A stretch of 64,000 nt of DNA from Octopus bimaculoides. Taxonomy: Eukaryota. Location of the stretch: assembly GCF_001194135.2 (NCBI RefSeq), contig NC_068997.1, positions 37,850,984 through 37,914,983 of the forward strand, in the 5' to 3' direction. Position 1 is the stretch's first letter. Each line of letters begins with the position of its first letter. Both the position numbers and the translations under genes were made by a program. This document shows positions 2,195 through 64,000 of the stretch, piece after piece. The notes under the pieces are model-generated. The model worked only from the letters and a program-made list of their open reading frames with translations. It was not told the origin of the DNA and did no database searches.

Positions 2195-2322
2195 TTGCAA
2201 TTTAAACGGTTACTAAGCGATACATTAGAAGCATGTGTAGGTCTATTTGAAGTTGTATGTATACAAAAAGGAATTAAAGGTAATGTTAATGCTACTTCTT
2301 AATAATCATTATTATTATTATT

Positions 2323-2788
2323 GAGTGAGAAAGCAGTGCATGCCATCAAAGTGACACTAGGGTAAAATATACGAAGTCCAATATACTCATCATGACTACC
2401 CATCTGATAACGGTACACCAGGCCCATGCATCACAGCTATATATGCGTGACATGGTAATCACATATATTCAGATCGAGTAGCTCATCCCACTCAAAAGGT
2501 CCCCGTATAAGTGTTGTTTAAGGATGTTGAACGAAGTGCCCATGTTCCCGGAGTTGAATCATTCGAACCCCAAAGAATTCCTCTCAACAAATGGATATGA
2601 TATCCCCCTACTACTTCTGATCAGATGCACATATCATGCTCAACTTGTTAAAGTCAAACAACTGACATGCAAATCGGTGGTAGTGAGCAGAATATTTGCT
2701 TTAGCCCATGTTTAATACCAAGACAAAACAATGTACGTGGTAACACTTACAATCAGTTAAGATCAGAAGCCATGAGAGCCACTGCCTG

Positions 2789-2791
<3 letters not shown>
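2323..2791 (-). mobile_element. Non-coding (AAT)n-flanked interspersed element, copy 1
   Basis: Reverse complement of 63254-63797 (shared ccaggcagtggctctcatggc ... gtgtcactttgatggcatgc). (TTA)n on both sides. Confidence 0.85.

Positions 2792-2861
<70 letters not shown>
2790..2861. repeat. (TTA)n microsatellite
   Basis: Pure trinucleotide run between the non-coding element and the 3' end of an R4 copy. Confidence 0.95.
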
Positions 2862-2862
<1 letters not shown>

Positions 2863-4995
2863 TACTCTTAAACTGCATGTTTGTTACAGTCATTCGCCGA
2901 GACACAGCCAGTGTCCTACTGTGAGTGAAGGAGAAGAGATATTACAGTATGACTGAAAGCTTGGGGAGTGCAAGTGACAGGGACAGTAGCGAAATATCTT
3001 CATGTAATACAACATACATTTAAATTGATAGGGTTTTTCTAAGGTTGTGGGCAGTTCTTGTCAGCACAATCTATTGGATTTCTCTGAGATACGGTTCTCC
3101 TGGGATATTATCTAGACGTTTCTGACATCCATTTCTTATCATAAATAGGCCACCCACAATAACAGGAACAGTTCTCCCTTTCAGATGCCACATCTTTTGC
3201 ATTTCAATTTCTGGGTCCTTACATTTAAGTATTAAATTGTCAAATTCCTTTACAGATATATTTTTATCAGTGAGAACACTTACATCTATTAGTCTACAAG
3301 TATTTTGTTCTCTGTCTTTATATCCTGGATCGTTCTGTCGGTGTTGACTGGAAAATTCAAAGGATATTGACATTTTTACCTTCAACTATTGGCTCAGGAT
3401 GGTGTTCATACCTGTAAGCAGGAGTGATGATTTTGTAGTGTTTACATATTTTCCAATGTAAATACTGCCCTACCCTATCGTGGTGATTTTTGTATTCGTT
3501 TGGTGTCAGCACAGGACATCTCGAAACGAGATGGTCTATTGTTACATCAAATTTATCGCAGAATCTGCATTTAGGGTCAGAATCGTTTTGAAGAACGTTA
3601 GCCTGGTAGCTTTGTTCTTGTGCCGCCAATATGAAACCTTCAGTCTCTGCTTTCAGTCCTGAGCTTCTCAGCCACTAATGGGTTGTTACTTGGTCTACAT
3701 CAGCATTTTAGCTTCGAAGTATATACTGTCGATGCAGAGGCTTCTGGCTTCACCGCTCTTCAATTTGTTTCTGCTCTTTCTTTCTGGCAGTCTGTTTGAT
3801 CCATTTTGCTTGTTTAGTGGCAGTGGTTTCAGGTTCTTCATCTAATTCAGGGTTAAATGCAAGTTCCCTTGCGAATTTGTAAGCTTGTTTGACAATAGAA
3901 TGTTATTTCTTGCTGCTTTCATGTTTGCATACAAGTCGAAGCATCCAGTCCTCTGTACTACGTAAGTACTTGCCCATTGCTATCGTGGAGGTCTTATAGC
4001 ACAGTTCTACCTGAATCATTCCCCTTCCCCCACTATTTCTAGGTAGGTGCAGACGATCAACGTCTGTGTTTGGGTAGTGCATGTTCTTAGATGTTAGTAG
4101 TTTTCTTGTCTTCCTGTCCAGGCGTTGGAGCTCTGTTAATCCCAGTTAATGATGTTAAAATTGTATTGGACTACTGAAAGTGCCAGGGTGTTCATGGCTT
4201 CGAAACGATTTTTGGAGTTTAGTTCAGCTTTTAGTATGAGTCATTTTCTTCTGTAATACTCCTTTCGTATTTTTTCTTTCATAGTAGCATTTTGTATACC
4301 GTCTCCTTTGTTTATACTCAGATATTTATAGCTTCCTTGTGGGTAACGCTCCTTGATTGTAGTGTCGGTATCTAATTTAATGGAAACTGTTTGTTTGAGC
4401 TTTCTTCTTACAAAAGTTGCTTTAGCACACTTATCAAGGCCAAAATCCATCCCGATGTCATTGTTGAACTCTTTAACAGTTGTTAACAGCCCTACTAGCC
4501 TTTTGTCATTCCTAGCAAACAGCTTCAGACCGTCCATATAAAACAGATGATTTATTATAATATTATACATTTCGAACCCATACCTGGTGTTACTCAGTTC
4601 GTTTGAGATTGGGATTAGTACCATACAAAGGAGTAGTGGGGAGAGAGAGTCCCTTTGAAAGATGTCTCGTTTGATACTGATTGGCTCATCCTATCACTAT
4701 GGTTTAGGAGACGTATATTCCACTTGGCCATACTACCTTGTAAACGTTTGGAGACTACAGGAGAGATCATGTATATCAAAAGGGCCTCAAAGAGCCAATT
4801 ATGTGGGACACTATCAAACGCTTTCCTGTAGTCTATCAGGTTCTTGATGCTCCGGCAATTCTCTACAACCATTTTATTTATGAGTAATTGGAGTAATTGG
4901 ACTTTGCATCCATAATAAGTCCTTTTACAACCTTTTTGAGCCTGTGGCAGGACAGCGCTCTGTTCCAGGAAAGTGTGTATTCTTTCAGTTAGTAT
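2862..4995 (-). mobile_element. 5'-truncated R4/Dong-clade non-LTR retrotransposon (RT + RLE), copy A, frameshifted
   Basis: Minus-strand fragments IDYRKAFDSVPHNW, NHLFYMDGLKLFA, CRFCDKFDVTIDHLVSRCP (CCHC knuckle), RHNHDRVGQYLHWKIC-like segment (HHDRVGQYLHWKIC), LIDVSV and TVPVIVGGL. The 3' end runs into (AAT)n. Confidence 0.9.
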
Positions 4996-5014
4996 GGATG
5001 TGAGGATAATATTA

Positions 5015-5385
5015 TTATGACCACTTCCTCGGCGAAGGCGGAGATATTGTTTTTAGTCGTTTGTTTGTTTGTTTGTGGACAAGATATCTCAAGCACTGCT
5101 AGATGGATTCGGATGAAACTTTCAAATTATGTTTGGCCTTGTGACTGGCATGAACTGATAAGATTTTGGAATCTATCCGGTACCGGAAAGAGATTCTGGA
5201 TAATTTTTCCTGTTTTTTTACTTAATTTTTGAAAGCGGTCGGGTTCATTTTTAGTATTTTCGTTTGTGAGAGTAGTCAAGTTTATTCCAGATATTCTCAT
5301 TTTAAAAATCACCTCCGGCTAATCGTTGATACAACGTTGTTGTTGCTTTGGCAGAGGTTTGTGATCCCTGAGTGTTCTTCTTCTT
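5015..5385 (+). mobile_element. HINE/DINE-1-like (Helentron-associated) non-autonomous element
   Basis: 5' cctcggcgaaggcggag palindrome, then a (gttt)n core and agatggattcggatgaaact. 3' ctttggcagaggtttgtgatccctgagtg is a sub-terminal inverted match to the 5' motif. This is the architecture of HINE-type repeats. Confidence 0.55.
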
Positions 5386-5389
5386 ATCA

Positions 5390-8300
5390 TTATTCCTTCG
5401 TAACACAGTGTAGGTAAAAATGCACCGGAATCTTTAGTCATCTGTCAAGTTACAAGGACCTCAGACATAATACTTTCCTTAAGATGTGCGCTGTGCCCAA
5501 TAAGGCTACTTTTGCAAAACCATCAATTTTGCATGGGATTTCCAGTTGCCTTAATAAGTCTTGAAGTTTCAACGCTCTGATCACTACTGGTATCACTTTT
5601 ACATTACCCTCTCGCATTCCATGCAGTCTCGCCATTTCCACTTTCAAATCGAAGTACTTGGTGATTTTTTTCAACCTCTTTACTCATGTATGGCTACATG
5701 AATGATCTGACAGTATTTGTCTCTCTTATTCAATATGACAACATCCAGCCGACAGTTTTCTATTATGCAACCTGTCTGAAGATCATAGTCCCAGAATATC
5801 GTTACTTTCGCATCCTCCTACATAACTTTATTTGGTACATGCTTATACCAGTTCTCTGTTACTTCATACTGGTATTTACGGGGCATAAAAGCCAATGAAG
5901 ATACACACGCACTTTATCATGGCGGCGCTTGTATTTCTTTTTTTTTTGCAAGGCTCTCACATTCAGTTACCAAGTGGGTCACATTTTCCACTCTCTTTCC
6001 AGAGTCTACATTTCTGGCTGCCAGAAGTTTTATAGGTGTTATACTTCACTGAGTTTGTAGCGAGAGCCTGGTCTTGTGCAGCAATGATCAGGCTTTCGGT
6101 GTTACGCTTCAAATCACCATGCCCACGATGCTGTATTATCCTTAACGTCCTGTGTATTCCTTTCAAACTGTCCATGCATTCTCATTTCAAGAAGGTCATC
6201 TTTTCTATTCTTCTCAGCTGTTCGGTTAAACTCTTCCTTGCCCACCATTTCATCTGCATTTACACACATATCTTTCGCGGCATATTTCAGTAGGTCTTCA
6301 TCACTATTTATCAAATACTCGGCAAGCGTTCTCCTTTTACTCCTTATACAATAGTCTATACTAATTAGTCGTCTGCCACCATTCTTTCTTTTCATATACA
6401 GTTTTTACGTTTGCTTTAGGGTGTAGCGCCCCATGCAGCGTCATCAACTTTCTCGTCCTTCTATCCAGTGATGGAATTTTCTCCTTAGTCCATCTGAGGA
6501 TGGACGCACTATATCTGGCCACCGCAATTGCCCACAAATTCATTGCGGTAATCAAATCTTTGGTATTCAGGTTGATTTCAACACCATCTTCACCCATTTT
6601 TGATACGCCTCGCTGATCTTGACTTTCATTTCTTTGTGTAGAATGTCATCCAGTTCTAAAATCCCTAAATATCTATACCCACTACTGTCGGGTTCAACCA
6701 TGGTCTCTCCTGATGGTAACTGAAATCCTCTGCAGAATGCATTCTTCTCTAATTTCATATTAAGTACTGAGAATTTTGTAACCCCATATTTCACACCGAT
6801 GTCCCTACCACACTTCTGGAATGTTTTGGTTAAGGGATCTATCTGTTTTTCAAATTTTCCAAACAATTTAAGGTCATCCATAAACAGAAGATGGTTCAAT
6901 GATGGGCTTTTCTTCCCACATCGGTAACCTATCTGAACTTTCCTAAGTGTCATTGTTATGGGTATTAGTGCAATTACAAATAGGAACGGAGGAAACAAGT
7001 CACCTTGGAAGATTCCCCTATTAATATTAACTTCTCCAAGGAATACATTCCTTGAGTACAATTTGGTTTTCACTCTTATATGCTATGCATCAGAAAATTT
7101 GTGATGTTGTCAGCAACACCAAACATCACTAAACATATTCAACGATCCAAGAATGAAGCATCATATCATATGGTTTCTTAAAGTCAGTCTAAGCAATAGA
7201 CATGTTTGTATGATGTTTTTTACAATGCCTCAAAACTGTTTTATCGATGACCAGGTGATCCTTGGTACACTAAGTAATCTTCCTACATCCTTTTTGTTTC
7301 CTTTGTAGTATTTCTTCCTGTGCCAGGAAAGTGTATGTCTGCCGCACACATTCCAGTGAGTATCTTTCAGATTATATTTAGGCATGCTACGGTAGTTTCC
7401 CATAATATTCCCCTTTCTTTTATCTTTCATTATAAGTGTTGTCTTCTCAGTCACCATCCACGCGGGAACTGTACCTTTCTGGACACACTCATTCAATTGG
7501 GCTGCTAGTCTTTCATGCACCGCGTGGCATCTCTTCATCCAGAAGCCATGAATCCCATCTGGTCCGGGGGCTTTCTTGTCAGATACTTGTTAGATACCCA
7601 CTTGTTTTTTCACGTTACCCGTGCTTATGACAAGATTCCTTTGTTTCTTTCCTCCTTGTAATTCTGTCTGGAGAGTTCCTATCCATATTGCATCCCTTTT
7701 ATGTACCACATTATTTCCCCATCATCCGCTCCACAACTCTTTGACTTCATTTGCATCAGGAGCAACATTTTCCTCATTGTCACCTTCTAACGTTCGGAAG
7801 AATTGCTTCGGGTTATTTTGAACAATCTATTCTCGAACTGCTTATTTCTGTTCACAAATCTTTTGATCTTCTGGATTTTTGCCATGATCCTCTTTTTTAA
7901 CTGCTCTATTACTGCATCAAACCAGTTCTTCTGTATTTTATATTTCTTCTCTAATTTTTCTCGGTCGGTATTGTACCCATTTTTCCAGTTTCCTCTTAAC
8001 AATTGCTCAATTTTTCCTAGATCTTGCTTTGCCCACATTATGTCCCTTTCAATGCGTCGTTTCCACCATGGTTCTTTTGCTCCATCATTTTTTGTTATTT
8101 TAATTTGTAATTTCTCCTCAACAAGTACCGCAGTAGCTCGAAGAAGATTCCTTGTTTGTGTTATGTCCTCCGTCTGGATGTATGGTATAACAGTATTTAT
8201 CTTTCGTGTTACTTTATTTATCATACTCCTATCTACCCATCCCATATTCCTGGGAACTTTTTTCTTCTGGGGCATTCATCAAGTCAGCAAGACGTCTTTG

Positions 8301-24771: not shown

Positions 24772-24834
24772 TTTGGAGACGAAGGATACAACATATACAC
24801 ACATACCAAGTCGGAGGTAAGAAGGAAATGTGGA

Positions 24835-26327
24835 GCTGTATACAACAGCTAATAGTTAACAAAATGAGTTCAGAAAAAACAAAAAATCGCATAAACTTAA
24901 CAGACTGGATTACCAAAAGCATTTCGATAGTATACCTATCACTTTTCACAACGGGTTTGTGCATGTTGCATTTTCCTTGCTCAATTTCATCTCGGATCAG
25001 CCAATCCTTGCGTACATAATGTTCAGCTCTTGCTCTGGAATTCCATACGCACAGGAAGCAGCAAAATTCAGTATATCCAAGCTGAAGGCCAGTAAGCATG
25101 GCCACAACCTTAAAATCTGCACAAATATGCCAGGTATGGTCATCATACTGTATGCCTGTTAGAATTGCTTTCAGATTTTCATATGATTCTTTCATGGTTG
25201 TGCTATAAGCTATGGAAACAGAAGGCAGAGTATTACCATTGCGTAGTAGAACAGCTTTGATACTGTCCTTGGATGCATCTATGAAAAGTCGCCAGTCGGT
25301 TTTATCATATGGTATTTCCAGTTGCTCAAAAAGTTCAGTGATGTCATTACAAAGGCATAAATCATCCTTCATGGTGAATAATGCAAGTAAATCCTCTGTA
25401 CGCATTCTGTACAGTGTTATCTTCACTCCTTTCTCAAGAAGATTACGTTCTTGAAGCCTTGATGCCAGAAACTCCCTTTTCTCTTTGGTTAAATAGAGAT
25501 CCCTGCACAAGTCATTCAGAGCCTCTTGAGAAAATGGTATTGGTTTCTTCTCGCTTTCTGGATCATTGGGCTCCACACATTCACCACTGGAATGTTCATC
25601 AGCACTGTTGGAACTCTGCATTTCTTCATCTGGAGTTTTGGAGACAGGTAAATTTTCTAAGTGCTCTACTGGGTGCATTGCTGATTGCAAATTTTGGTAA
25701 ACAATGTGTTTCTTTTTCTTTGCTGTAGTACAGCCTGTAAAGTCATGGTGACAGAAATAGCAATCATTAGAGTGATCTTTCTGCTCACGCCAAATCCTTG
25801 GCACACCAAACTTCATGTGAACATTTTTTCTGCATACCAGGCACTCAATGTCTTCACACATGTAAGGCAACACACATGAGGAGCCTATTACTTATCCTGG
25901 TCTCCTAAGTAATAATCGAAGTACGCCTTGTATAAATTTTTGATATGGCGTGTAACACTGCGCTTTTCTTTAGCAAAAGTCAATTCCCCACAGATATAAC
26001 AGAATCTGTTTGGATCATTTTTGCACTGTCTTGCACTCATTGTTGTAAACAAATAAGATCTGAAAGATAAAAACTAACATTAAACACGAGCTTTGAATCA
26101 CATTGTAGGTGTTACTAAGATTAGTCTCTAGCCCTGGGTTGAAATCCATTTTACAATGCGGTAGAAAATTTTATTTAATAATAATGACAAAAAGGGTATA
26201 CAGTGACAATTCTGAAGAAACCATGCTTAATTCAATAAAAGAAAAAGGTCAGAAATGGATTTCCTATGTCATTTTGCATATAAAAATGGCTACAGATCTC
26301 TTGTACTTTTATGAGTGTTGCACAGTG
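24835..26327 (-). mobile_element. Chapaev3-like (CMC) DNA transposon, internally deleted
   Basis: N-terminal CKNDPNRFCYICG...LGDQDK, FGVPRIWREQKDHSNDCYFC, DWRLFIDASKDSIKAVLL, WHICADFKVVAMLTGLQLGYTEFCCFLCVWNSRAR. CACTG terminus at 26327. The superfamily name is from my recall of the motifs. Confidence 0.75.
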
Positions 26328-27937: not shown

Positions 27938-30927
27938 TTGTCTGTGTTTGTCCCCCTAGCATTGCTTGACAACCGATGCTGGTGTGTTTATGTCCCCGTC
28001 ACTTAGCGGTTCGGCAAAAAGAGACAAAGAATAAGTCCCGGGGCTGACTTGCTCGACTAAAGACGGTGCTCCAGCGTGGCCGCAGTCAAATGACTGAAAC
28101 AAGTAAAAGAGTAAAAGAGTAAAACCAAAACAACAAAGAAAGTACCATCATGGTTTTTGAAGACAAAGAAAAAGATACCTGATTTACGGAAGACCATCAA
28201 CAATGTAATGATGTTTATTGCGTGCAAACAAGCAAATCATTATACCTCTCACCAACAAAAAGTGAAAAAGGAGAAAAATCATGATGTTTGGAGACAGCAA
28301 AAAGAGGACACTCACTTGCAAACTGATCACACTCAAGCAGGAGCTAAAATCTGTCAGTGAAAAACTCCGACATCAGAAGAGAATAACCAAGAGAAAAACA
28401 GTAAATAAAAAATTTCACCAGAACCAGGCAGCAGTATAGAGACACGAGGGGAGAAGCAGTGAACATCAGAGAAGCTCCTTCACGAGAAGACAGACTCCTT
28501 TTGGAGGAAAATCTGGAGTGAACAGAAGGAGATTAACCAAGATGCTCTGTGGCTGAAAGAAATCCGAAAAAGTTATTATCCCTGCATTACACCCAAGACA
28601 TACAGGATGGATGGTGATATTCATGTAAGTGTAATCAAGAAACCCCAGGATGGAAAAGCACCCGGAAAGATACTTGATTCTTGGATATTTGTACAAGATG
28701 GTAACCTTCACCCGTCCATTTCTTATCAACCTGTACCAACAATGGGTACAATAGCATACCACACTGGTTAGCCCTGGCAGTGACAAAATTGATCTTCCAG
28801 TGCAGAACCACCCACATAACAAAAGACTACCGGCCAGTTGCATGGCAGAACTTAATATATGATATACACAGCATGCTTAAACCTCTTCTTCCAAGACCAT
28901 TATGAAACCAGTAATATCATCACAACAGAACGAGCAGCTGGGAAGAAGTGAGTCTGACGATGTGCCGAGCAATTGTTAATAAAAAAAACTGTGGTGTCAG
29001 AGGTGCAGGAGCACAGGAGGAACCTAGTATCAATGTGGCTAGACTACAAGAAATTTTTGACTTTGTTCCCCACTCATGGATGCTAGAAGCCCTTCAACTT
29101 GCTAAAGTTCCAGTGAGAATAGTCAAAGCCATAGCCGACCTGATTCATCGTGGGTCACCATTTTGAAATTAAACACAAAGAGTGGCTGTATAATCACTGA
29201 TAGAATACAGTATCACAGAGGCATATTCCAAGGGGACAGCCTCTCTGTGATGTTGTTTATACTTTCTGTAAATCCTTTGTCATTCATGTTAAGAAAGTCT
29301 GAAGGATATCTCACTGGTTCACAAGCAAACGAAAATACCAAAAGTACCCACTGCTCGAGATGAAAAAGAGCCTTGACCTGGTTACAACATTCTCAAAGGA
29401 TATAGGCTGGAGTTTGGTCAGGATTAATTTTGTTATATGGTTGTGAAAAGGTGGGGAAACTGTAAACCAAACTAGTAACATCTCCATCAATGACTTGACT
29501 GTTTCCTTTGTATCTAATGAGGAATGCTGCATGTATCTAGGGATGGATGAAAAGATATCTTACAATGTCACCTGTAATAAAACGCATGGCACTCAAGAAT
29601 ATTACAACCGAATAAAGAAACTTTGGACCTCGGAATTCTCTGCATTCAATAAAACAGTGACCTACAATATATTTGCAGTGCCAGTATTCTTACCAACATT
29701 TGCATTTAGGTTGCTTGATTGGACGCTTGATAAGATCCGAGCTATTGATGTGAAAACCCAGAAAATACTAACTAGCACACAATTTCTCCATAAACAGTGA
29801 TGTAGATCGTCTCTACCTAAAACGAACACAAGGCGGCAGAGGTTTAACATCAATCCAAAGTGCCTTTGAATGTCGTATCATATCCCTTCGGAAACATCTT
29901 TTAGCCACCAAGTGTTGAAATGCATCCCATGACCAACTTTTCATACATGAGGCTGATAACATCATAAGACTTGGAAGGCAACTCCTTGAACAGCATTCCC
30001 TGTCTGATAACCTTAAATATATGCCCAAAGAAGTCGCACGACTCTACCGCAACGTATCTTCAGATGACAGGATAAGCATATATGAGCAGAAGATTGTGCA
30101 TGGATGTGTTAGTAGAATGTTCCGCGATGACAGTAACATGGATCATGAAAGCCGTTTATCATGGATCAACAACCGGATTACTACCTTCCACTTTGAAGGG
30201 TATGCGTTTTCAATCCAGGAATAGGAAATATCAATCAAATACCTGATGCACAAAAGATACAGAAGTGCAGGAAAAGCAGTAAAGTGTGAGAACCGATGCA
30301 GACTTTGTGGAATTGACATCGAATATATCAATCATATCATACGCAGTTGTCCAAAAATGTTATCACAGTATTAACTACCGATGAGACATGATGTAGCTAG
30401 GACACAATATAACGAGCTCCGTCGAAAGGATAACCCCGAGGACAAAGAAATAAGAACCTACAGTATGGTGGAAGCCAAAGCCACTCAAAATAAAAAGCAG
30501 TACTGGTGGAATGCCCCAGTGAAAACGCAAATAAAATGTAAACACAACAGACCTGTTATAATGATTTGGAATAGAGAAGAGAAACTATATACAATTGTGG
30601 AAATCAGCTGCTCAGCGAATGTTAACATGAAGCTGGAGATCAGTGAAAAGGAGAATATCCACGATGAACTATTGAGAAATCTGCAGTTACTCTATCCAGA
30701 TTACAAGTTCACGTCTTAATTGAGGCACTGGGATATACAACACGATGCCTAAATACCAATCTTGAGAATGTTAGGCTTCTGAAAACCAGAAAGGAGAAAC
30801 CTGATTCGAATACTACAGATCCAATCCATCACTGCAACTGTACATATAAGTATATATCAGCATGTCTACATATGCAAATATATGCATGAGAAGACATACA
30901 TGAAACAAAATATACAAATCTGCACGT
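26698..30927 (+). mobile_element. Near-full-length R4-clade retrotransposon flanked by (ACAT)n, pseudogenised, interrupted by a SINE
   Basis: N-terminal FSWNYELNTDLFNCFKKAKQNSAVGYMNQLKSCWD, RT RGIFQGDSLSVMLFILSVNPL, GGRGLTSI, CRLCGIDIEYINHIIRSCP, RLE KHNRPVIMIW..TIVEISC, C-terminal LQIQSITAT. Confidence 0.9.
27598..28125 (+). mobile_element. SINE family 1 inserted in the R4 element
   Basis: gacgcaggagtggctgtgtggtaagtagcttgc ... gtcaaatgactgaaacaagtaaaagagtaaaagag. Confidence 0.9.
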
Positions 30928-31015
30928 ATACATACATACATACATACATACATACATACATACATACATACATACACACATAGATACATACATGCATACA
31001 TACAAACATACATGT
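30928..31015. repeat. (ATAC)n microsatellite at the R4 3' end
   Basis: Visible run directly after the 3' UTR. Confidence 0.95.
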
Positions 31016-36232: not shown

Positions 36233-37580
36233 AGGGTGCGATGGGTAAATTGTCAACATTTCATATTATTTATTTCGCACATGCGCATTGTTTGTATTTG
36301 ATTTTGCCGACTACACAGTATGTTAGGGTCAGTTGGGCACCGTCTATGAGAAAAACAGCACCATGACACAATTCATTCTGCCAGAAATTTAGAAACGACA
36401 TGCTGTACTACTTGGCATTCGCGCCGAAAGCTCCAATACAAACATTTCAGAGTGTTTGTGTGTCAATCTGAGGACAGTGCAATCTGAGGACAGTGCAATC
36501 TGAGGACAGTGCAATCTGAGGAAAGTGCAATCTGAGGACAGTGCAATCTGAGGATAGTGCAATCTGAGGACAGTGCAATCTGAGGACAGCGCAATCTGAG
36601 GACAGCGCAATCTGAGGACAGTGCAATCTGAGGACAGTGCAATCTGAGGACAGTGCAATCTGAGGAAAGTGCAATCTGAGGACAGTGCAATCTGAGGACA
36701 GTGCAATCTGAGGACAGTGCAATCTGAGGATAGTGCAATCTGAGGACAGTGCAATCTGAGGACAGTGCAATCTGAGGACAGTGCAATCTGAGGATAGTGC
36801 AATCTGAGGACAGTGCAATCTGAGGATAGTGCAATCTGAGGACAGTGCAATCTGAGGACAGTGCAATCTGAGGATAGTGCAATCTGAGGATAGTGCAATC
36901 TGAGGATAGTGCAATCTGAGGACAGTGCAATCTGAGGATAGTGCAATCTGAGGACAGTGCAATCTGAGGACAGTGCAATCTGAGGACATGTACCAAGAGT
37001 GATAAAAATCGAACATCCTGTCAACATCGTGGTGTTTGAAATGATCACTAGAGATGGCGACTTTATGCCTCCATTCATCTTCCCACACGGCTTCAGATTC
37101 AACATGGAGGCCTACATCAAGTGCTTGGAGGAGGCATGCTTCCCTGGGTCAAGAGGGTGGCTGCTACAAGGCTCTTCACCATGCCGCACAAGCAAGACAA
37201 CCCAGTCATGGCTGTCAGACAATTTCTGTGACCACATCACCCCCAATATCTGACCACGTAACTCCCCAGAATGCAACCCCCTTGATTACAGTTGATACAG
37301 TTGAGCGAGAGACCAACAAAACTCCTTGTAACAACAAAGATGAACTAAAGGCAATTTATTTAGCAGCATTCACCAACCTAAACAAGTGTTCAAAAGAGTT
37401 GCAGGAGATTCCAAAGTCGCCCGGAGGCCGTGGTAAAAGCCAATGGCGATTTTATTGAATAAATTTTCTCTTTAGTATTTCAAGATATCTATGTAATTTT
37501 GGCAAATATATCTGTTAAAATGAGATGTCAGTGTTGTTTTCATTTTTGAGTAATTGAGTAATTTAGACGACAGTTTATTC
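36233..37580 (+). mobile_element. Tc1/mariner-superfamily element (DD37D/maT-like) with its central region replaced by a minisatellite
   Basis: TA followed by a cagggtgcgatgggtaaattgtc terminus. N-terminal KRHAVLLGIRAESSNTNISECLCVNLRTVQ, resuming VPRVIKIEHPVNIVVFEMITRDGDFMPPFIFPHGFRFNMEAYIKCLEE. The 3' end is lost in a gap. Confidence 0.7.
36465..36988. repeat. 16-bp minisatellite (aatctgaggacagtgc), about 32.75 copies
   Basis: Exact 16-bp phase at 36465, 36481, 36721 and 36961. Variants are gat/gaa at positions 9-11 and agcgc. Confidence 0.97.
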
Positions 37581-42719: not shown

Positions 42720-42932
42720 GAGTCGGTTTCAAATTTTGGCGCAAGGCCAGCAATTTCGTGGAAATGAGTAAGTCATTTTAATATGTACTCAACTCGTACG
42801 TATTTTATCGACCTCGAAAGGTGAACAGCAACATCAACCCCAATGAAATTTGAACTCAGAATGCAAAGTCAGAAAAAATTCCGATAAGCATTTTGTCCAG
42901 CGTGATAACGATTCTGCTGAGCCACCGCCTTC
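42720..42932 (-). mobile_element. tRNA-derived SINE family 2
   Basis: rc aaggcggtggctcagcagaatcgttatcacgctggacaaaatgcttatcgg...tctgagttcaaattt...tttcgaggtcgataaaat...gctggccttgcgccaaaatttgaaacc. Homologous to 62975-63186. Confidence 0.75.
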
Positions 42933-43149
42933 ATCTCAAGTGTGATATTGACCGGCACAACGGTAGGCTAGAGTTAATCAACAGTGGAAGTTGCATATAC
43001 ACAGATAAAGTAGCGTGGATGCTATAGGACTAATGTTAGTTTAGGTGAGAATATTTGATTTAGTTAGGATATACTTGCAAGTAGACAGAGGAGTATAAAT
43101 AGGAAAAAAGCCTAAGAAAGACGAAAGAAAATGGAATGGAAAAAGATGT

Positions 43150-43683
43150 TTGTATTCCCGTTCACCTCTCTCGCAGTTCGTGAGAGAGGAGAACAGAAAT
43201 ACAGACGCCGATGAAAGAAGGCACTGGCTAAGGAAAATTTACATGAATCAAGGAACAGAAGCGCTTTTTTGTGCTGCGCAGAAACAAACACTTAGAACAA
43301 GTTGCACCAAATGCAGGGATGATAATACAGAAGAATGTGACAAGTGCAGAGTTTGCAGTGATAAAGGTGAGACTGAATGGCATATTGTGAATGAGTGCGC
43401 AAAGGTGTCCCCTCTCTCAAATACAAAAGAAGATACAATAATGTCGCAAGACTGATCCATTGGAAGGTGTATAACAAGTATGGATTGGATGGAGTAAATA
43501 CGTATTATGGACAAATTCCAGAACTAGACTCGAAAAGGACAAAATAAAGAAACTGAAACTTAATGATTATATGTGATCATGAAATTGAACTTCGAAAGCC
43601 AAATGTAATGGTTGTGGAATAAAGAGGACACATCTGTTTAATCATGACAAAGTAATGAAATAGAAAAGAAAAAAAAGAAGCAG

Positions 43684-43685
<2 letters not shown>
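43150..43685 (+). mobile_element. Old R4/Dong 3' fragment ending at (AAT)n
   Basis: ALFCAAQKQTLRT...CDKCRVCSDKGETEWHIVNECAK, and DHEIELRKPNVMVV (RLE PD region). Confidence 0.7.

Positions 43686-43760
<75 letters not shown>
43686..43760. repeat. (AAT)n microsatellite
   Basis: Pure run. Confidence 0.95.

Positions 43761-45010: not shown

Positions 45011-45073
<63 letters not shown>
45011..45073. repeat. (AAT)n microsatellite
   Basis: Pure run. Confidence 0.95.
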
Positions 45074-45075
<2 letters not shown>

Positions 45076-47887
45076 CCACGATGTTTAACATATGAGAGCG
45101 ATAAAACACTGCTTCGAAATCTATCCAAAATCATCGGGAATAAAAACAACAAATGGAGCCTAAAATAACTGACAAAGTGTTGGACTATATCCGAGTAACT
45201 AATACACATTTCTATTTTCCGAATGAAATTATGTATTTTAACTATGTATCATCTCTGCCACGACAAGATCCCCAACTCCTGAATAAAATACCTAACAGGA
45301 ACACATAAAAAGCTGGCTGAGAAATTTAATGAAACGCCAGTAGAGCCAGAGATAATGCCTGACTGGCTCACGGAAGGGGAACTATCCTAATTCCCAAATC
45401 CACTGAAACGGCAATCGCATAAAATAGAGACTGATAACTTGCCTCACGACATTTTTACAAAGCCTTTACTGCAATAATATCGTAGAGAATGAGCAAACAT
45501 CTGGAAGAAAACAATCTGTTTCCAGAAGACCAGAACGGATGCTACAAGAGCTCATACGGATGTAAAGATCAGCTACTGATTAATAAAGCCATACCTGAAG
45601 GCAGCTCTAGAAAGAAGGGCGTAAGTATGGCCTGGATCGATTATCGAAAGGCTTTTGATAATATTCCCCACACACGGATCCTAGAAACAATATCCATGAA
45701 CAAGGTAGCACCAATATTCATAAAATATATAAAACATTCCATGAATGAATGGCAGACTGAGCTACAGCTCCAGACAAAGAGGGACTCATAAAAACAAAAG
45801 CCATCCCCATCAGAAGAGGAATATACCAAGAAGATACGCTCTCTCTCCGCCCCTTTCCTGCTTTGCACCTTTATCTGACATGCTAAACAGAACTGGGTGG
45901 GGATGCAACTATTACGGCAAAACAATCAGCCACCTTTTATATATGGATGATCTAAAACTGTACGCTACAAATGATAAACAGTTGGAAACATTACTATAGA
46001 CAGTACATGGATTTACCAAAGAGATAGACATTAAATTTGGCTTAGAAAAATGTGCCAAAGCAACCTTGAAAAGAGGGAAAGTAGTTAAGAATAGCAACAT
46101 CACACTAGATAAAGGAAAGGAAATAAGAGAATGAGACAAAAGCCAGACATACAAATACTTGTAAATCAATGAACTAGATACGATACAACACACACAAATG
46201 AAAGAGAAGGTAAGAAAAGAATACTATAGACGAGTAAGATTAATATTGAAAACAGAGACGAATGCGAAAAACAAGATAATAGGTATCAACACATTAGCCG
46301 TCCCAGTTATGAGTTACAGGTACAATATTCTTAACTGGACTCTGAATAAACTAATCAAAATAGAGAAAAAAAAAAATAATAATGACAGGATTTCGGATGC
46401 ACCACATGAAAGATCCTACCTTCACAAGTTTATATATACAACGTATCGAAGGTGTTAGAGGCCTTACACGGCTAGAAAATTATTACAAAATAACCACTAT
46501 AGGACTACAGAAATACCTACTTCAGAAGCAAGGAAAAAAATAGAAATAGCCGCAAAACACGAACAAAACAAAAAACTGTTTTCAGTCTTTAAGGAAGCTG
46601 ACAAATTCAAAACAGAAGTCATAGTACCTAACAACTATGAAGAAAAAGGAGAAACAACAAACGCTGTAAAACAAATGAAATCCAAGCTAAAGCTGGAACA
46701 ACAATGAATAATGATAAAACGATGCCCCTTCATGGAAAATATTGGGTTAAGCTAAACAAAAAAGAAATAGACAAAGCAAAATCCCAACAATGGCTGAGAA
46801 GCTCAGGCCTCAAAGCAGAGACTTAAGGATTTTTAATTGCAGCACAAGGTCAAAGCCTTCCCGCCAAAAATTACCAAAAACATGTAATGAAAAGAAATAC
46901 AACTGACTGCAGAATATGTGGAGATGGACAAGAAACAATAAATCATATTGTCTCTGGCTGCCCAATCCTACATAAGAAGGAATATATTCGCAGATACGAC
47001 AGAGTAGGGATCAATATATACTGGAATCTATGGAATAACAACAGAATAAAGATGGTATAGGTACACACTAGAAAAGGTCATAGAAAATGAGAAAGTAACC
47101 ATGCTCTGTGATATACCAATACAGACAGATAGAGAAATTTAAGCCAATATGCCAGATATAGCTATCAGTGATTACCAAGAAGAAAAATGCTTTCTAATCG
47201 ATGTATCAACACCAACAGATGACAGTGTTTCTCTAAAAGAAACGGAGAAACTTNNNNNNNNNNAAACAATAAATCATATTGTCTCTGGCTGCCCAATCCT
47301 ACATAAGAAGGAATATATTCGCAGATACGACAGAGTAGGGATCAATATATACTGGAATCTATGGAATAACAACAGAATAAAGATGGTATAGGTACACACT
47401 AGAAAAGGTCATAGAAAATGAGAAAGTAACCATGCTCTGTGATATACCAATACAGACAGATAGAGAAATTTAAGCCAATATGCCAGATATAGCTATCAGT
47501 GATTACCAAGAAGAAAAATGCTTTCTAATCGATGTATCAACACCAACAGATGACAGTGTTTCTCTAAAAGAAACGGAGAAACTTTCAAAATACAAAGATC
47601 TAGAAATAGAGGCAACTCGAATGTGAAGTCTAAAAATAGAAACAATTTCTATTACAGTAGGCACACTAGGTATGATAAAAAATATTCAGATAAATGCATA
47701 ACAAAAATAGTGGGACTAACAAGAATATATAACATACATAATATAACACTACTAGGCACCACATTCATCTTACTTAAAACATTTTCAATACAGTAACAAC
47801 ATCTCAACAAAGCACAGCACGTACTCAAGGCACACAGAGCTGAGCTTGGTACTGCAGTGAAAGCACATGATAAAAATAAGACTACTG
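45074..47887 (+). mobile_element. 5'-truncated R4/Dong retrotransposon with (AAT)n on both sides (contains an assembly duplication)
   Basis: GCKDQLLINKAI, SMAWIDYRKAFDNIPH, ISHLLYMDDLKLYA, KEYYRRVRLILKTE, CRICGDGQETINHIVSGCP, FLIDVSTPTD. The 3' UTR ends in aataacaacaacaataataat. Confidence 0.92.
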
Positions 47888-47940
47888 AATAACAACAACA
47901 ATAATAATGATAATAATAATAATGATAATGATAATAAAAA

Positions 47941-48164
47941 CATCCTTAAACAACCCTTATTCAATGACCTTTTGAGCGAGGAAAAGTCTAACTGTGAGCA
48001 CCACTTGCAAGGTCTTGCGCTGTTGATATGAGTTCACCGCGCACATATGGTTGTGATGCATGTACCTGCTGTAACATTATCAAACCGGTAGTCATGATGG
48101 ATGTACTGAGCTTCGTATATTTGATCCAAGTGTCACTATGATGGTATGCACAGCTCTCTCACTC
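47941..48164 (+). mobile_element. Non-coding (AAT)n-flanked element, copy 2 (5'-truncated)
   Basis: Matches the 3' ~250 bp of 63254-63797 (catatggttgtgat...agtgtcactatgatggtatgcacagctctctcactc). AAT repeats on both sides. Confidence 0.8.
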
Positions 48165-48193
<29 letters not shown>

Positions 48194-48196
<3 letters not shown>

Positions 48197-48698
48197 CTGT
48201 AGAATATGTGGAGATGGACAAGAAACAATAAATCATATTATTTCTGGCTGCCCATTCCTGGTTAAGAAGGAATATATTCACAGATACGACAGAGCTAGGA
48301 CCTATATACACTGGAAGCTATGCCAACACTATGGGATAACAACAGAAAAAAGATGGTGTAAACACACGCCAAAAAAGGTCACAGAAAATGAGAAAGCAAC
48401 CATACTCTGGGATATGCCAATACACACAGATAGAGAAATTAAGGCCAATAGACCAGATATAGTTGTCAAAGATCATGAAGAAAAAAAAATGCTTTCTAAT
48501 TGATGTATCAATACCAGCAGATGACAACGTTTCCCTAAAAGAAATGGAAAAACTTTCAAAATACAAAGACCTGGAAATAGAGGTAACTCGAATGTGGAAT
48601 CTAAAAACAGAAACAATTCCTATCATAGTAGGTGCCTTAGGTATAATAAATAAATATTCAGACAAATACATAACAAAAACACCAGGACTTACAAATAT
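48194..48698 (+). mobile_element. 5'-truncated R4/Dong copy starting at (AAT)n
   Basis: NCRICGDGQETINHIISGCP...ILWDMPIHTDREIKANRPDIVVKD, FLIDVSIPADDNVSLKEMEKLSKYKDLEIEV...IPIIVGALG. Confidence 0.9.
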
Positions 48699-51497: not shown

Positions 51498-52592
51498 GAG
51501 AAGCAATTCTTCCGAACGTTAGAAGGTGACAATGGGGAAAATCTTGCTCCTGATGCAAATCAAGCCAAGGAATTCTGAAGCGGATTATGGGGAAATAATG
51601 TGGTGCATAAAAGGGATGCAATGTGGCTAGGAACTATCAAGACAGAATTACAAGGCGGAAAGAAACACAGGAATATTATCATAAGTATGGGTGACGTGAA
51701 AGAACAAGTGGGCAAAGCGCCTAACTTCAAAGCCCCCGGGCACGAAGGGATTCATGGCTTTTGACTGAAGGGATGCTACGTGGTGCATGGAAGACTAGCA
51801 GCCCAATTGAATGAGTGTGTCCAGAAACGTACAGTCCCCGCGTGGTTGGTGGCTAGGAGGACAATACTTATAATGGAAGATAAAAGAAAGGGGAATATTG
51901 TGGAAAACGACTGTCCCATACCATATCGAAACATAATTTGGAGTGTGTGCGGCAAAGATATATACTTTCCTGGCACAGGAAAAAATACTACCAAGGTAAC
52001 AAAAAGGATGTAGGAAGAATTCTCAGAGTACCAAGGATCACCTGGTCATCGATAAAACACTTTTGAGGCATTATAAAAAACATCATATAAACATGTCTAT
52101 GGCTTGGATTGGCTTTAAGAAGGCATATGGTATGAGGCCTCATTCTTGGATCGTTGAATGCCTGCAGATGTTTGGTGTTGCTGACATCACACATTTTCTG
52201 ATGCATAACATGAAAGGGTAGAAAACCAAATTGTACTCAAGGAATGTATTCCTTGGAGAAGTTAATATTAATAGGGGAATCTTCCAAGGTAACTCGTTTC
52301 CTCCGTTCCTATTTGTAATTGCACTAATACCCATAACAATGACACTTAGGAAAGTTAAGATAGGTTACCGATGTGGGAAGAAAAGCCCTTCATTGAACCA
52401 TCTTCTGTTTATGGATGACCTTAAATTGTTTGGAAAATTTGAAAAACAGATAAATTCCTTAACCAAAACATTCCAGAAGTGTGGTAGGGACATCGGTATG
52501 GAATTCGGGGGTTACAAAATTATCAGTACTTAATATGAAAATACGGAAGAAAGCATCCTGCAGAGGATTTCGGTTATCATCGGGAGAGACCA
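51498..52592 (+). mobile_element. R4/Dong RT fragment (copy B family) starting at (AAT)n
   Basis: Closely similar to the reverse complement of about 6700-7800 (gaagcaattcttccgaacgttagaaggtgacaatg...; INRGIFQG; LNHLLFMDDLKLFG). Confidence 0.9.
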
Positions 52593-53345
52593 AGGGATTC
52601 TGGGCTGAAACAACACCGAAATTGTGCCGCATTGTTTGCCCCTCGCTATGTACTTGGTATCATTTCTGATGCACCTCATCGACGCTTTAATATCTACTTG
52701 GGCTATTAAAGCCGCTTTTTTCGTCTCTGCTGAAATGCATCTGAAAAGCACCGTTCTTTTCTCTATTGCTTCATGTGCCTCTGACGGAACAGATAGGTTG
52801 GCCCAGGTTTGTTCGTGTTTAATCAGTTTCCATGCCTGAGCCAACATTTTATCTCTGCTTGTGAGGTCCACAGTGAAGCGTTGCTTCCTTTTCGCTGCTG
52901 CTGCAGCGAACGTGTTTTTGTTGTTGGTAATATTGTTGCTGCTGCTGCCATTGTTGTTGTTGTAGCTGCTTTTGTTGGTGTTGTTTGTGTTGTTTTTTTT
53001 TTTTGCTGTTGATGTTGTCACTTTTGCTATTGTTGTTGTTGTTGTTGCCAGCGCTGCTGCCGCTGCTGTGGCTGTCTCTTTAGTTGTTGTTGCTACTACC
53101 ACTACTATTGCTGCTGCTGTTGTGACTCATACCGCTGTTGTTACTGCTACCACTGTTGTTACTGCGAAGTGAACTTTCTACTGTTCCACTCTCGTTTTTC
53201 TCCTTCCCTTCTGTATTGTTGCCAGTAACGGAGGGAAGGGGAGAGAAATCTTCAGCAGTCACCAGATTTGGAGGAGGAGCAGTTTTCTTTTTTCTCAAAT
53301 ATTTCAAAACGCGCTCCGCCATCTTGTTGAGTTGTATTTTATTAA
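52593..53345 (-). mobile_element. Possible L1/Tx1-type LINE 5' end (ORF1 N-terminal fragment)
   Basis: Starts caagatggcgg (L1/Tx1-like start) with MAERVLKYLRKKK. Low-complexity S/N/T/A linker, then FAAAAAKR...RTVLFR...TKYIARGKQCGTISVLF, possibly RRM-like. Confidence 0.4.
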
Positions 53346-62800: not shown

Positions 62801-62974
62801 TTTAACAATTGTTTTACAACCAATTCCTGTTCTTTACATAACCTGCCTACCTTTTGAAAAATATTTTCTTTCGATAGTATAAACCATACTACAATGTGAA
62901 GTTAATTTATTGTTTGTAACTGATAACTTAGTAGCTAGATTGTATGTTGTGTTAGTTTAGAAATAACGGTAATT

Positions 62975-63184
62975 CTTTCTCTTATAGGCACAAAGCCCGA
63001 AATTTGGGTGCGGAGGCAAGTCGATTACATCGACTACAGTGCTCAACTGGTACTTATATTATTGACCCAGAAAGGATGAAAAGCAAAGCCGATCTGGGTG
63101 GAATTTGATCTCAGAACGTAATGACGGACGAAATTCTGCTAAGCATTTTGCCTGGCGCACTAACAGTTTTGCCAGCTCACCACC

Positions 63185-63186
<2 letters not shown>
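62975..63186 (-). mobile_element. tRNA-derived SINE family 2
   Basis: rc aaggtggtgagctggcaaaactgttagtgcgccaggcaaaatgcttagc...gttctgagatcaaattcc...cttttcatcctttctgggtcaataa...taagtaccagttgagcac. Confidence 0.8.
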
Positions 63187-63253
<67 letters not shown>

Positions 63254-63256
<3 letters not shown>

Positions 63257-63797
63257 GCCCTGATGCAGTACCAGACAGTGGCTCTCATGGCATTTGATTG
63301 GAAGTGTTATCATGTACATTGTTTTGTCTTTGTATAAAAGATGGGCTATAGCAAATATTCTGCTCAATACCACAGATTTGCTTGTTACTTGTTTGACCTT
63401 AACCAATTGAGTATGTCCATCAGTGGCTGACAATATATGCATCTCTGACCACAAGCAGAAGTAGTGAGGGAGCACCATAGCCATGTGTTGAGAGGAATTC
63501 TTTGGGGTTTGAATAATTTACCTCAGGAGACATGGGTGTTTTGTTCATCATTCCCAAACAAACCTTATTCAGAGAACTTTGGGTGGTATGGGCTATTCAA
63601 CATGAAAAATATTCTAACTGGACCCCACCTGCAAGATCATGCTATGTTTATCTTGAGATGTGATCACCATGTCGCGAACATATGGTTGTGATATATGTGC
63701 CTGGTGTACCCTTATCAGATAGGTAGCGGTGATGGGTATACTGGGCTTCGTATTATTTACCCCAGTGTCACTTTGATGGCATGCGCTGCTCCCGTTC
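63254..63797 (+). mobile_element. Non-coding (AAT)n-flanked element, copy 3 (longest)
   Basis: Lies between (AAT)n 63187-63253 and (AAT)n 63798-64000. Homologous to 2323-2791 and 47941-48164. Confidence 0.85.
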
Positions 63798-63845
<48 letters not shown>

Positions 63846-63871
63846 AATAACGATAATAACGATAATAATAA

Positions 63872-63902
<31 letters not shown>

Positions 63903-63921
63903 AATAATAACGATAATAACG

Positions 63922-63956
<35 letters not shown>

Positions 63957-63957
63957 G

Positions 63958-64000
<43 letters not shown>
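63798..64000. repeat. Long (AAT)n with AAC/GAT variants, running to the window end
   Basis: Visible run. Confidence 0.95.

What the first reader, a model, noticed from the sequence alone, without database searches (positions are those of the whole stretch)
63187..64000. Candidate non-autonomous retroposon parasitising the (AAT)n-targeting R4/Dong machinery
Seen: a 544-bp element with no long ORF, TIR, LTR or recognisable tRNA box A/B head. There are three diverged copies in 64 kb (2323-2791, 47941-48164, 63254-63797). All sit inside AAT repeats with the same strand polarity as the R4 copies, share one 3' end, and differ at the 5' end. Two directly follow an R4 3' tail. Its 3' end does not visibly match any R4 3' UTR in this window. 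Established: most SINEs borrow APE-LINE enzymes, and non-autonomous partners of RLE elements are rare (for example R2-derived SIDEs). Inference: a site-specific SINE-like family mobilised in trans by Dong-like RT-RLE. With the two R4 lineages it would form a microsatellite-targeted retroelement system.
Basis: partly seen in the sequence, partly recalled or inferred. Interest (0 to 1): 0.8.

Follow-up and report, generated by a model that had tools for sequence, protein, structure and literature searches.

The report
Short AAT-repeat-targeting retroposon in octopus
A roughly 550-base non-coding mobile element, seen three times here and in at least six more places in the Octopus bimaculoides genome, always sits inside AAT repeats in the same direction as neighbouring Dong-like jumping genes, so it probably borrows their copying machinery; this is a modest addition to a known kind of genomic parasite, not a new principle.

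Summary
Three diverged copies exist: C 63254-63797 (+), A 2323-2791 (-) and B 47941-48164 (+). All three end at the same 3' base, and all three are embedded in (AAT)n with the polarity of the neighbouring restriction-like-endonuclease (RLE) LINEs. B is 5'-truncated. One detail is wrong: A and C share essentially the same 5' end, within 14 nt. The element is non-coding. It has no TIR or LTR, no tRNA, 5S, 7SL or snRNA head and no detectable ribozyme. Its last 150 nt match no LINE 3' UTR in the window. Six short "uncharacterized proteins" of Octopus bimaculoides are translations of further copies. One of them reads the same 3' end followed by 11 Asn codons, which would be (AAT)11. Copies A and B directly follow LINE tails of two different lineages, as expected for repeated hits on one landing pad. 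The best reading (about 0.55) is a non-autonomous retroposon mobilised in trans by Dong-like RLE LINEs, recognised mainly through its (AAU)n tail. The main rival (about 0.3) is the 5'-truncated tail of an autonomous LINE not sampled here. I could not test the R4/Dong clade assignment, trans-mobilisation, or absence from Repbase/Dfam. Interest is moderate.

The parts
63254..63797 (+). Element copy C, 544 bp and the most complete copy. Bases 63255-63268 (TGCCCTGATGCAGT) are extra 5' nucleotides absent from copy A.
63187..63253 (+). (AAT)22 array, the 5' flank of copy C.
63798..64000 (+). AAT array (about 68 units with AAC/GAT variants), the 3' flank or tail of copy C. It runs off the window.
2323..2791 (-). 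Element copy A, 469 bp. It has the same 5' and 3' ends as C, plus internal deletions of about 17, 8 and 48 nt.
2791..2862 (-). (AAT)24 on the minus strand. It is the 5' flank of copy A and at the same time the tail of LINE R4a.
2308..2322 (-). (AAT)5 on the minus strand, the 3' flank of copy A.
47941..48164 (+). Element copy B, 224 bp. It is 5'-truncated at about position 300 and has the same 3' end.
47890..47940 (+). Degenerate AAT/AAC/GAT array. It is the tail of LINE R4b and the 5' flank of copy B.
48165..48191 (+). (AAT)9, the 3' flank of copy B. It is followed at 48196 by a 5'-truncated R4b copy.
2863..5052 (-). RLE-LINE lineage 'R4a' (RT, CCHC and RLE remnants). Its 3' UTR ends at 2863 on (AAT)24.
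45074..47889 (+). RLE-LINE lineage 'R4b', 5'-truncated. It starts right after (AAT)20 and its 3' end, ...AAGACTACTGAA, lies at 47889. It contains an assembly duplication across a 10-N gap.
48196..48698 (+). Second R4b copy, 5'-truncated at the CCHC motif. It runs into an N gap.
5453..8275 (-). RLE-LINE lineage 'R4c', with an ORF from a candidate start ATG at 8275 and no APE domain detected. Its short 3' UTR is followed by degenerate AAT/AAG repeats. A second, 5'-truncated copy lies at 51498-52595 (+), right after (AAT)n.

Best explanation
This is an old family of non-autonomous retroposons in an octopus genome, with a consensus of about 550 bp. It carries no protein and no recognisable promoter or ribozyme.

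Proposed mechanism (inferred): its RNA ends in an (AAU)n tail. An RLE-type, Dong-like LINE protein nicks the (ATT)n strand of an AAT microsatellite. The nicked DNA end anneals to the (AAU)n tail and primes reverse transcription (target-primed reverse transcription, in trans). The 5' end is joined inside the same array, sometimes after premature termination (copy B) and sometimes with a few extra bases (copy C).

Recognition would rest mainly on the microsatellite tail rather than on a LINE-derived 3' UTR. At least three LINE lineages here have unrelated 3' UTRs but share the AAT tail and target.

Shown: the family exists, its ends are defined, and it is AAT-embedded, directional, non-coding and adjacent to RLE LINEs. 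Inferred: trans-mobilisation, tail-based recognition and the source of transcription, which may be read-through from upstream sequence.
For: - Three copies share one 3' end and sit in AAT arrays on both sides with one polarity. Arrays cover only 1.0% of the window.
- A fourth, independent 3' junction exists in O. bimaculoides. Protein P0126 reads ...ACTAFSL-N11-unique sequence.
- Five further O. bimaculoides ORFs derive from the 5' half of other copies.
- Copy B is a 5' truncation, which is typical of target-primed reverse transcription.
- A and C start within 14 nt of each other, which argues for a discrete unit.
- The element is non-coding. Substitutions per codon position are 33/36/31, and stop codons occur in every frame.
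- The neighbouring LINEs carry an RT domain and C-terminal CCHC plus PD...D/ExK motifs. Their only PDB matches are the RLE regions of R2 proteins. No APE domain was found in the two stretches upstream of the RT scanned, residue pieces 7233-7589 and 7790-8275.
- These LINEs begin or end on AAT arrays in the same polarity.
- R4b relatives from other samples also end in (AAT)n.
- Dong elements are known (TAA)n-specific elements, including in a mollusc (PMC3812793). Dong-R4 LINEs are abundant in Octopus vulgaris (PMC13282606).
- The LINE 3' UTRs are unrelated to each other and to the element.
Against: - Only two copies define the 5' end, and C has 14 extra bases.
- No promoter, tRNA-like head or 5' ribozyme was found, so how the RNA is made is unexplained.
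- There is no sequence or fold similarity to any LINE tail in the window. The link to the LINE enzymes is therefore circumstantial.
- The copies are old (K2P 0.22-0.37), so activity cannot be inferred.
- No genomic DNA of other copies could be retrieved.
Confidence: 0.55

Rival explanations
1. The three copies are 5'-truncated 3' ends (3' UTR) of an autonomous Dong-like LINE family whose longer copies are not present in this window. In that case there is no separate non-autonomous element.
For: - A shared 3' end with variable 5' ends is the classic LINE pattern, and copy B is clearly truncated.
- At least three RLE-LINE lineages with mutually unrelated 3' UTRs already coexist in 64 kb, so a fourth is plausible.
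- The element has no promoter or head of its own.
- C has 14 more 5' bases than A, which could be upstream LINE sequence.
Against: - A and C end within 14 nt of each other at the 5' side and abut the AAT array directly. That is unlikely for random truncation of a multi-kb element.
- There is no coding signal anywhere in 544 bp, whereas the 3' UTRs of the LINEs here are only about 66-260 nt.
- Five of six O. bimaculoides ORFs come from the 5' half, so many copies reach that far. This is weak evidence, because ORF calling biases the sample.
Confidence: 0.3
2. The element is a passenger rather than an adapted parasite: a stretch that once lay between two AAT arrays downstream of an active Dong-like LINE. 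It would be copied repeatedly by read-through transcription (3' transduction). Reverse transcription would start in the distal (AAU)n and the 5' join would form by annealing at the proximal (AAU)n, giving apparently discrete units.
For: - Two of three copies lie immediately downstream of a LINE tail plus an AAT array.
- It has no promoter of its own.
- The discrete 5' end lies exactly at an AAT array.
Against: - The upstream LINEs of A and B belong to different lineages, and B is truncated. The adjacency is therefore better explained by independent hits on one landing pad.
- At least nine copies with K2P up to 0.37 suggest sustained amplification.
Confidence: 0.08
3. It is a retroposon mobilised by an APE-type LINE whose tail is also (TAA)n-like (as in I-clade elements). 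The AAT context would then be partly its own tail and partly chance or AT-rich target preference.
For: (TAA)n tails are not unique to Dong (my own knowledge of the Drosophila I factor). Octopus genomes carry RTE, CR1 and L1-Tx1 LINEs (PMC13282606).
Against: - All three copies have long AAT arrays on the 5' side as well.
- No APE-LINE tail in the window matches the element.
- The only LINEs that share its context are RLE-type.
Confidence: 0.05
4. It is a DNA transposon derivative (MITE) with a TAA/TTA target duplication, such as a PIF/Harbinger type, that happens to land in AAT repeats.
For: TWA target sites are typical of PIF/Harbinger (my own knowledge). With random orientation, three of three copies in one polarity has p of only 0.25.
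Against: - There are no terminal inverted repeats.
- Copy B shares only the 3' end, which cut-and-paste transposition does not produce.
Confidence: 0.02

Closest known systems
Dong (Bombyx mori) and Dong-like R4-clade LINEs, including DongBg of the snail Biomphalaria and the 'Dong-R4' families annotated in Octopus vulgaris
   Same: They insert into (TAA)n/(AAT)n microsatellites in one polarity and form head-to-tail chains in the arrays (PMC3812793; PMC13282606; window).
   Different: Those elements are autonomous, several kb long, and encode RT and RLE. This element is about 550 bp and non-coding, and it shares no sequence with the LINE copies here.
R2 SIDEs and other bipartite non-autonomous LINE derivatives (from R2, RTE, Ingi)
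   Same: They are short non-coding passengers of a site-specific RLE LINE that use the parent's target site.
   Different: SIDEs keep the parent's 5' ribozyme and 3' UTR. Here no ribozyme was detected and neither end matches any LINE in the window. As of 2018, R4 was not among the clades known to produce such derivatives (PMC5786205).
SINEU mobilised by target-specific Tx1 LINEs in crocodilians
   Same: It is a non-autonomous retroposon thought to be moved by a target-specific LINE. Its transcription may depend on flanking sequence (PMC4494074).
   Different: SINEU has an snRNA-derived head and an APE-type partner. This element has no RNA-gene head, and its presumed partner is RLE-type.
Classical tRNA-derived SINEs of cephalopods (OK, OR1, OR2, Ceph-SINEs)
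   Same: They are short interspersed non-coding retroposons of the same host group. A repeat of this general type lies next to copy C.
   Different: Those SINEs have a pol III tRNA head at the 5' end and are dispersed. This element has no detectable head and is confined to AAT arrays in all copies seen.

Membership tests
Retroposon inserted by target-primed reverse transcription | A constant 3' end with variable, truncated 5' ends. | tested here: met
   All three copies, plus P0126, share the 3' end. B is truncated at about position 300.
Dong-type (TAA)n-specific insertion | Flanked on both sides by (AAT)n/(TAA)n, always in one polarity. | tested here: met
   Three of three copies in the window. 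The 3' side is also seen in P0126. Arrays cover 1.0% of the window. A genome-wide test was not possible.
Classical SINE | A 5' head derived from tRNA, 7SL, 5S or snRNA, with an internal pol III promoter. | tested here: not met
   ARAGORN found 0 genes. Rfam gave no hit at gathering score or at E<=10 other than chance or low-complexity matches. A B-box-like GGTTCGAAT occurs only internally, at about position 240 of copy A.
Classical SINE | A 3' tail derived from the partner LINE's 3' end. | tested here: not met
   The last 150 nt compared with every LINE 3' region in the window and in L001 gave nothing consistent across copies. The best single comparison had p=0.015, for one copy in 30 tests. 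The partner could lie outside the window.
Bipartite non-autonomous LINE (SIDE-like) | 5' and 3' segments homologous to the parent LINE, and a 5' self-cleaving ribozyme in R2-type cases. | tested here: inconclusive
   There is no homology to the LINE copies present. No Rfam ribozyme was found. A custom HDV-like descriptor gave one AU-rich hit in A that is not conserved in C, at the rate seen in shuffles. No certainly full-length LINE 5' end is available in the window.
MITE / DNA transposon | Terminal inverted repeats. | tested here: not met
   The repeat finder shows no terminal inverted repeat in C or A.
LTR or solo LTR | Long direct terminal repeats, or a TG...CA unit with a fixed-length target duplication. 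| tested here: not met
   There are no long direct repeats. The ends are ACCAG... and ...CACTC/GTTC. The truncated copy B does not fit a solo LTR.
RLE-type LINE (neighbouring elements) | RT followed by a CCHC motif and a PD-(D/E)xK restriction-like endonuclease, with no APE domain. | tested here: met
   RVT_1 hits. CRICG...HIISGCP, RPDIVV, IDVS and EKLSKYKDL motifs read directly. The only PDB hits are the RLE regions of R2 proteins, E=0.016 and 0.034. No Exo_endo_phos hit in the two stretches upstream of the R4c RT that were scanned (7233-7589, 7790-8275).
R4/Dong clade (neighbouring elements) | Placement within the R4 clade in an RT phylogeny, as opposed to HERO, NeSL or R2. | not testable with these tools
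   No reference LINE sequences were available. Some HERO families also target microsatellites (PMC4640811), so the clade name rests on target specificity and on published octopus annotation.

The most novel reading that the evidence does not exclude
This would be the first described non-autonomous family that depends on an R4/Dong-type (RLE) LINE. It would be recognised not through a borrowed LINE 3' UTR but only through its (AAU)n microsatellite tail, which also specifies the target by annealing to the nicked AAT array. If so, Dong-like enzymes in octopus would be 'relaxed' for template choice but strict for target. That would explain how several LINE lineages with unrelated 3' UTRs and a promoterless passenger share one landing pad.
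Probability: 0.35. Interest if true: 0.55.

Novelty: new member of a known kind. Interest (0 to 1): 0.4.

Why it matters
Non-autonomous partners are well documented for APE-type LINEs. Among restriction-like-endonuclease LINEs they are known essentially only for R2. A Dong-dependent passenger with no LINE-derived tail would suggest that, for microsatellite-targeting LINEs, the repeat tail alone can act as both template tag and target guide.

That idea can be tested directly in retrotransposition assays, and it bears on current efforts to use RLE LINEs for site-specific gene insertion. It would also help explain why AAT arrays in octopus genomes turn into nested chains of retroelements.

If instead the element is the tail of an unsampled LINE, the finding is routine repeat annotation.

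Tried and rejected
- **Known RNA families.** I scanned the whole window at gathering score and both full-length copies at E<=10. Only chance or low-complexity hits appeared, and there was no tRNA, ribozyme or snRNA. ARAGORN found nothing.
- **HDV-like ribozyme.** A custom descriptor applied to the 5' regions gave one AU-rich hit in A. It is not conserved in C and occurs at the rate seen in shuffles.
- **Overall RNA structure.** Copy C folds no better than shuffles (z=-0.5). The 3' consensus fold has only 3 compensatory pairs among 3 sequences. No terminal hairpin is shared with the LINE tails.
- **Internal dimer.** This idea was suggested by a 24-nt direct repeat 239 nt apart. The halves align with p=0.013 in C but p=0.33 in A, so I rejected it.
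- **Internal tRNA-like segment.** Copy A has GGTTCGAAT with TAGTAGGGGG 44 nt upstream. No model supports it and it is not at the 5' end, so I left it as an unexplained detail.
- **External DNA copies.** Two conserved 20-21-mers were scanned in metagenome contigs and one in viral contigs. Only two chance matches of 20-29 nt appeared. The O. bimaculoides proteins are not linked to contigs in the collection.
- **Bacterial promoter/terminator scan.** Irrelevant and at background level.
- **Pfam on other ORFs in the window.** Nothing informative.

Full report
**What is in the sequence**

The window is a eukaryotic scaffold with 33.5% G+C, 15 runs of N and many microsatellites. blastn with copy C (63254-63797) finds two other copies. 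One is at 2332-2791 on the minus strand (69% identity over 533 alignment columns). The other is at 47987-48156 (74% over 181). An nhmmer profile of the three copies extends them to 2323-2793 and 47939-48164 and finds no fourth copy.

In a pairwise global alignment, A and C are 81.6% identical over 456 ungapped positions (K2P 0.22), with about 100 gap columns. B is more diverged, with K2P of 0.30-0.37.

All three copies end at the same base (...GATGGCATGCACTGCTTTCTCACTC in A), directly followed by AAT repeats. All three are also preceded by AAT-type arrays in the same polarity:
- A has (AAT)24 upstream and (AAT)5 downstream.
- B has about 17 degenerate units upstream and (AAT)9 downstream.
- C has (AAT)22 upstream and more than 60 units downstream.

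Arrays of five or more AAT/ATT units cover 1.0% of the non-N window. Three of three insertions inside them, in one orientation, is therefore not chance.

One detail is wrong. A and C have the same 5' end (ACCAGRCAGTGGCTCTCATGGC), and C carries 13-14 additional bases between the array and that point. Only B is 5'-truncated.

**What the element lacks**

- It has stop codons in all six frames. The A-C substitutions show no codon periodicity (33/36/31), so it is non-coding.
- It has no terminal inverted repeats and no long direct repeats.
- ARAGORN finds no tRNA in the window.
- Rfam finds nothing at gathering score in the whole window. At E<=10 on both full-length copies it finds only chance or low-complexity matches, with no tRNA, 5S, 7SL, snRNA or self-cleaving ribozyme.
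- A hand-written HDV-like descriptor gives one AU-rich hit in A. That hit is not conserved in C and occurs at the background rate of shuffles.
- The whole element folds no better than shuffled sequence, with z=-0.5.
- The consensus fold of the last 140 nt has only three compensatory pairs among three sequences.

**The neighbours**

These LINEs have reverse-transcriptase domains. C-terminal to the RT they have a CCHC motif and PD...(D/E)xK endonuclease motifs, read directly from the translation as CRICGDGQETINHIISGCP, RPDIVV, IDVS and EKLSKYKDLE. The only solved structures matching this region are R2 retrotransposon proteins, aligned over the same motifs at E=0.016 and 0.034. No apurinic-type endonuclease domain is detected in the two stretches upstream of the RT in the longest copy that were scanned, 7233-7589 and 7790-8275.

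At least three lineages with mutually unrelated 3' UTRs are present:
- R4a at 2863 to about 5052 on the minus strand.
- R4c at 5453-8275 on the minus strand, with a second copy at 51498-52595 on the plus strand.
- R4b at 45074-47889 and at 48196 onward, both on the plus strand.

Their copies begin or end on AAT arrays in the same polarity, forming head-to-tail chains. One chain is R4c, R4a, then A on the minus strand. The other is R4b, B, then R4b on the plus strand. Relatives of R4b found on contigs from other samples also end in ...ACTACTGAAC(AAT)n.

Published work describes Dong as a (TAA)n-specific element in insects and in the snail Biomphalaria (PMC3812793). It also reports Dong-R4 as abundant and recently active in Octopus vulgaris (PMC13282606). 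I could not run an RT phylogeny. Some HERO families also target microsatellites (PMC4640811). "R4/Dong" therefore remains a reasonable label, not a tested one.

The stretch upstream of copy C's array (62960-63186) is not a LINE tail. It is one of two copies of a SINE-like repeat; the other is at 42785-42934. Both have a B-box-like motif on the minus strand. The end of the 42k copy corresponding to the one that abuts the AAT array at 63187 lies next to ordinary sequence. From memory it resembles the abundant tRNA-derived octopus SINE, but that is a lead and not a test.

**Relation of the element to the LINE tails**

I compared the last 150 nt of each copy by local alignment with shuffled controls. 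The comparison set was every LINE 3' region in the window, the sequences upstream of the other AAT arrays, and an external R4b-like tail. Nothing was consistent across copies. The best single value was p=0.015 for one copy, among 30 tests. The terminal 80 nt fold differently from the LINE tails. R4b relatives share a GCRCAGAGCTGYGC hairpin that the element lacks.

**Copies outside the window**

Translations of the element's accidental ORFs were searched against 5.8 billion proteins. The only hits are six short "uncharacterized proteins" of Octopus bimaculoides.
- Five derive from the antisense strand of the 5' half. They are 46-84% identical to copy C's translation over the aligned part.
- One derives from the sense strand of the 3' end. 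P0126 reads ...YPSITLMACTAFSL, then eleven Asn, then unrelated sequence. The Asn run is most simply read as (AAT)11, although AAC would also encode Asn. This would be an independent copy with the same 3' terminus followed by AAT repeats.

These hits identify the host as an octopus, probably O. bimaculoides or a close relative, and show at least nine copies. They also show that copy C is closer to the family consensus, and that A's 17-nt gap and C's 10-nt gap are secondary deletions. The consensus is therefore about 550 bp.

The DNA for these loci is not in the accessible collections. Scans of metagenome and viral contigs gave only chance 20-29-nt matches. A genome-wide census could not be made.

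**Interpretation**

The constant 3' end, the truncated copy, the strict AAT context and polarity, and the company of RLE LINEs with the same habit make a retroposon inserted by target-primed reverse transcription into AAT arrays the only well-supported class.

Polarity fits a simple mechanism (inferred). An (AAU)n RNA tail anneals to the nicked (ATT)n strand, so the sense strand of the insert lies on the AAT strand.

Three LINE lineages with unrelated 3' UTRs share only the AAT tail and target, and the element shares neither UTR. Recognition by the repeat tail is therefore the most economical hypothesis.

A and B sit behind LINEs of different lineages, and B is truncated. This argues for independent hits on one landing pad rather than co-mobilisation of a LINE-element composite.

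The main uncertainty is whether the roughly 550-bp unit is complete. Two copies ending within 14 nt of each other, 544 bp without any coding trace, and LINE 3' UTRs here of only about 66-260 nt all favour a discrete non-autonomous element. Two copies are still thin evidence, and a fourth LINE lineage with a long UTR cannot be excluded. How the RNA is transcribed is unknown. Read-through from upstream sequence is a possibility, and a pure "3' transduction passenger" is a minor rival.

**Comparison with known systems and novelty**

The element works like the passengers of site-specific LINEs (R2 SIDEs; SINEU with Tx1, PMC4494074). It fails the defining tests of a classical SINE, having no pol III head and no LINE-derived tail. 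It cannot be shown to be a bipartite LINE derivative.

A 2018 survey lists only RTE, Ingi and R2 as clades that generate bipartite non-autonomous LINEs, while noting 5' ribozymes in R4 (PMC5786205). A Dong-dependent passenger would therefore be a new member of a known kind, with a possibly distinctive tail-only recognition.

The 2026 O. vulgaris annotation lists 893 unclassified SINE families. I could not consult Repbase or Dfam. The family may already be catalogued without this interpretation.

**Verdict**

Noticed in passing
window 62960-63186 and 42785-42934 (both minus strand): Two copies (about 72% identical) of a SINE-like repeat with a B-box-like GAGWTCAAATTYC. The putative head end of the first abuts the AAT array that holds copy C. 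The corresponding end of the second lies next to ordinary sequence. From memory it resembles the abundant tRNA-derived octopus SINE, but Rfam and ARAGORN do not call a tRNA.
   Followed up: partly
window 46933-47253 and 47264-47584: Two 321-bp stretches are 100% identical and separated by a 10-N gap inside LINE R4b. This is almost certainly an assembly or scaffolding duplication, not biology.
   Followed up: partly
window 28115-30900 (+), with (ATAC)n at 30928-31013: Another LINE with RLE-like motifs (RHD..., KHNRP) ends next to an ATAC microsatellite rather than AAT. It may be a lineage with a different microsatellite association.
   Followed up: no
window 2540-2600 (copy A) and 63460-63520 (copy C): Copy A contains GGTTCGAAT (a B-box-like 9-mer) with TAGTAGGGGG exactly 44 nt upstream, which is tRNA-like spacing. 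This lies about 200-250 nt inside the element. In copy C the CpG has decayed to TG. No tRNA model matches, and the significance is unclear.
   Followed up: partly
window 43099-43759: A decayed RLE-LINE remnant (IHWKVY..., KPNVMVV-like motifs) ends in (AAT)25. A further (AAT)20 at 45012-45071 is immediately followed by the 5'-truncated R4b copy. The whole 43-49.5 kb region is a chain of AAT-targeted insertions.
   Followed up: partly
window 36464-36988: A 16-bp minisatellite (CAATCTGAGGACAGTG) of about 33 copies, 96% matching.
   Followed up: no
window 24674-25891 (-): A 406-codon open frame, the longest in the window without N. It has several Cys/His clusters and no Pfam match. Its identity is unknown.
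   Followed up: partly
window 63798-64000: The AAT array downstream of copy C contains a thrice-repeated AATAACGATAATAACGAT variant block. This suggests internal segmental duplication of the array after it formed.
   Followed up: no
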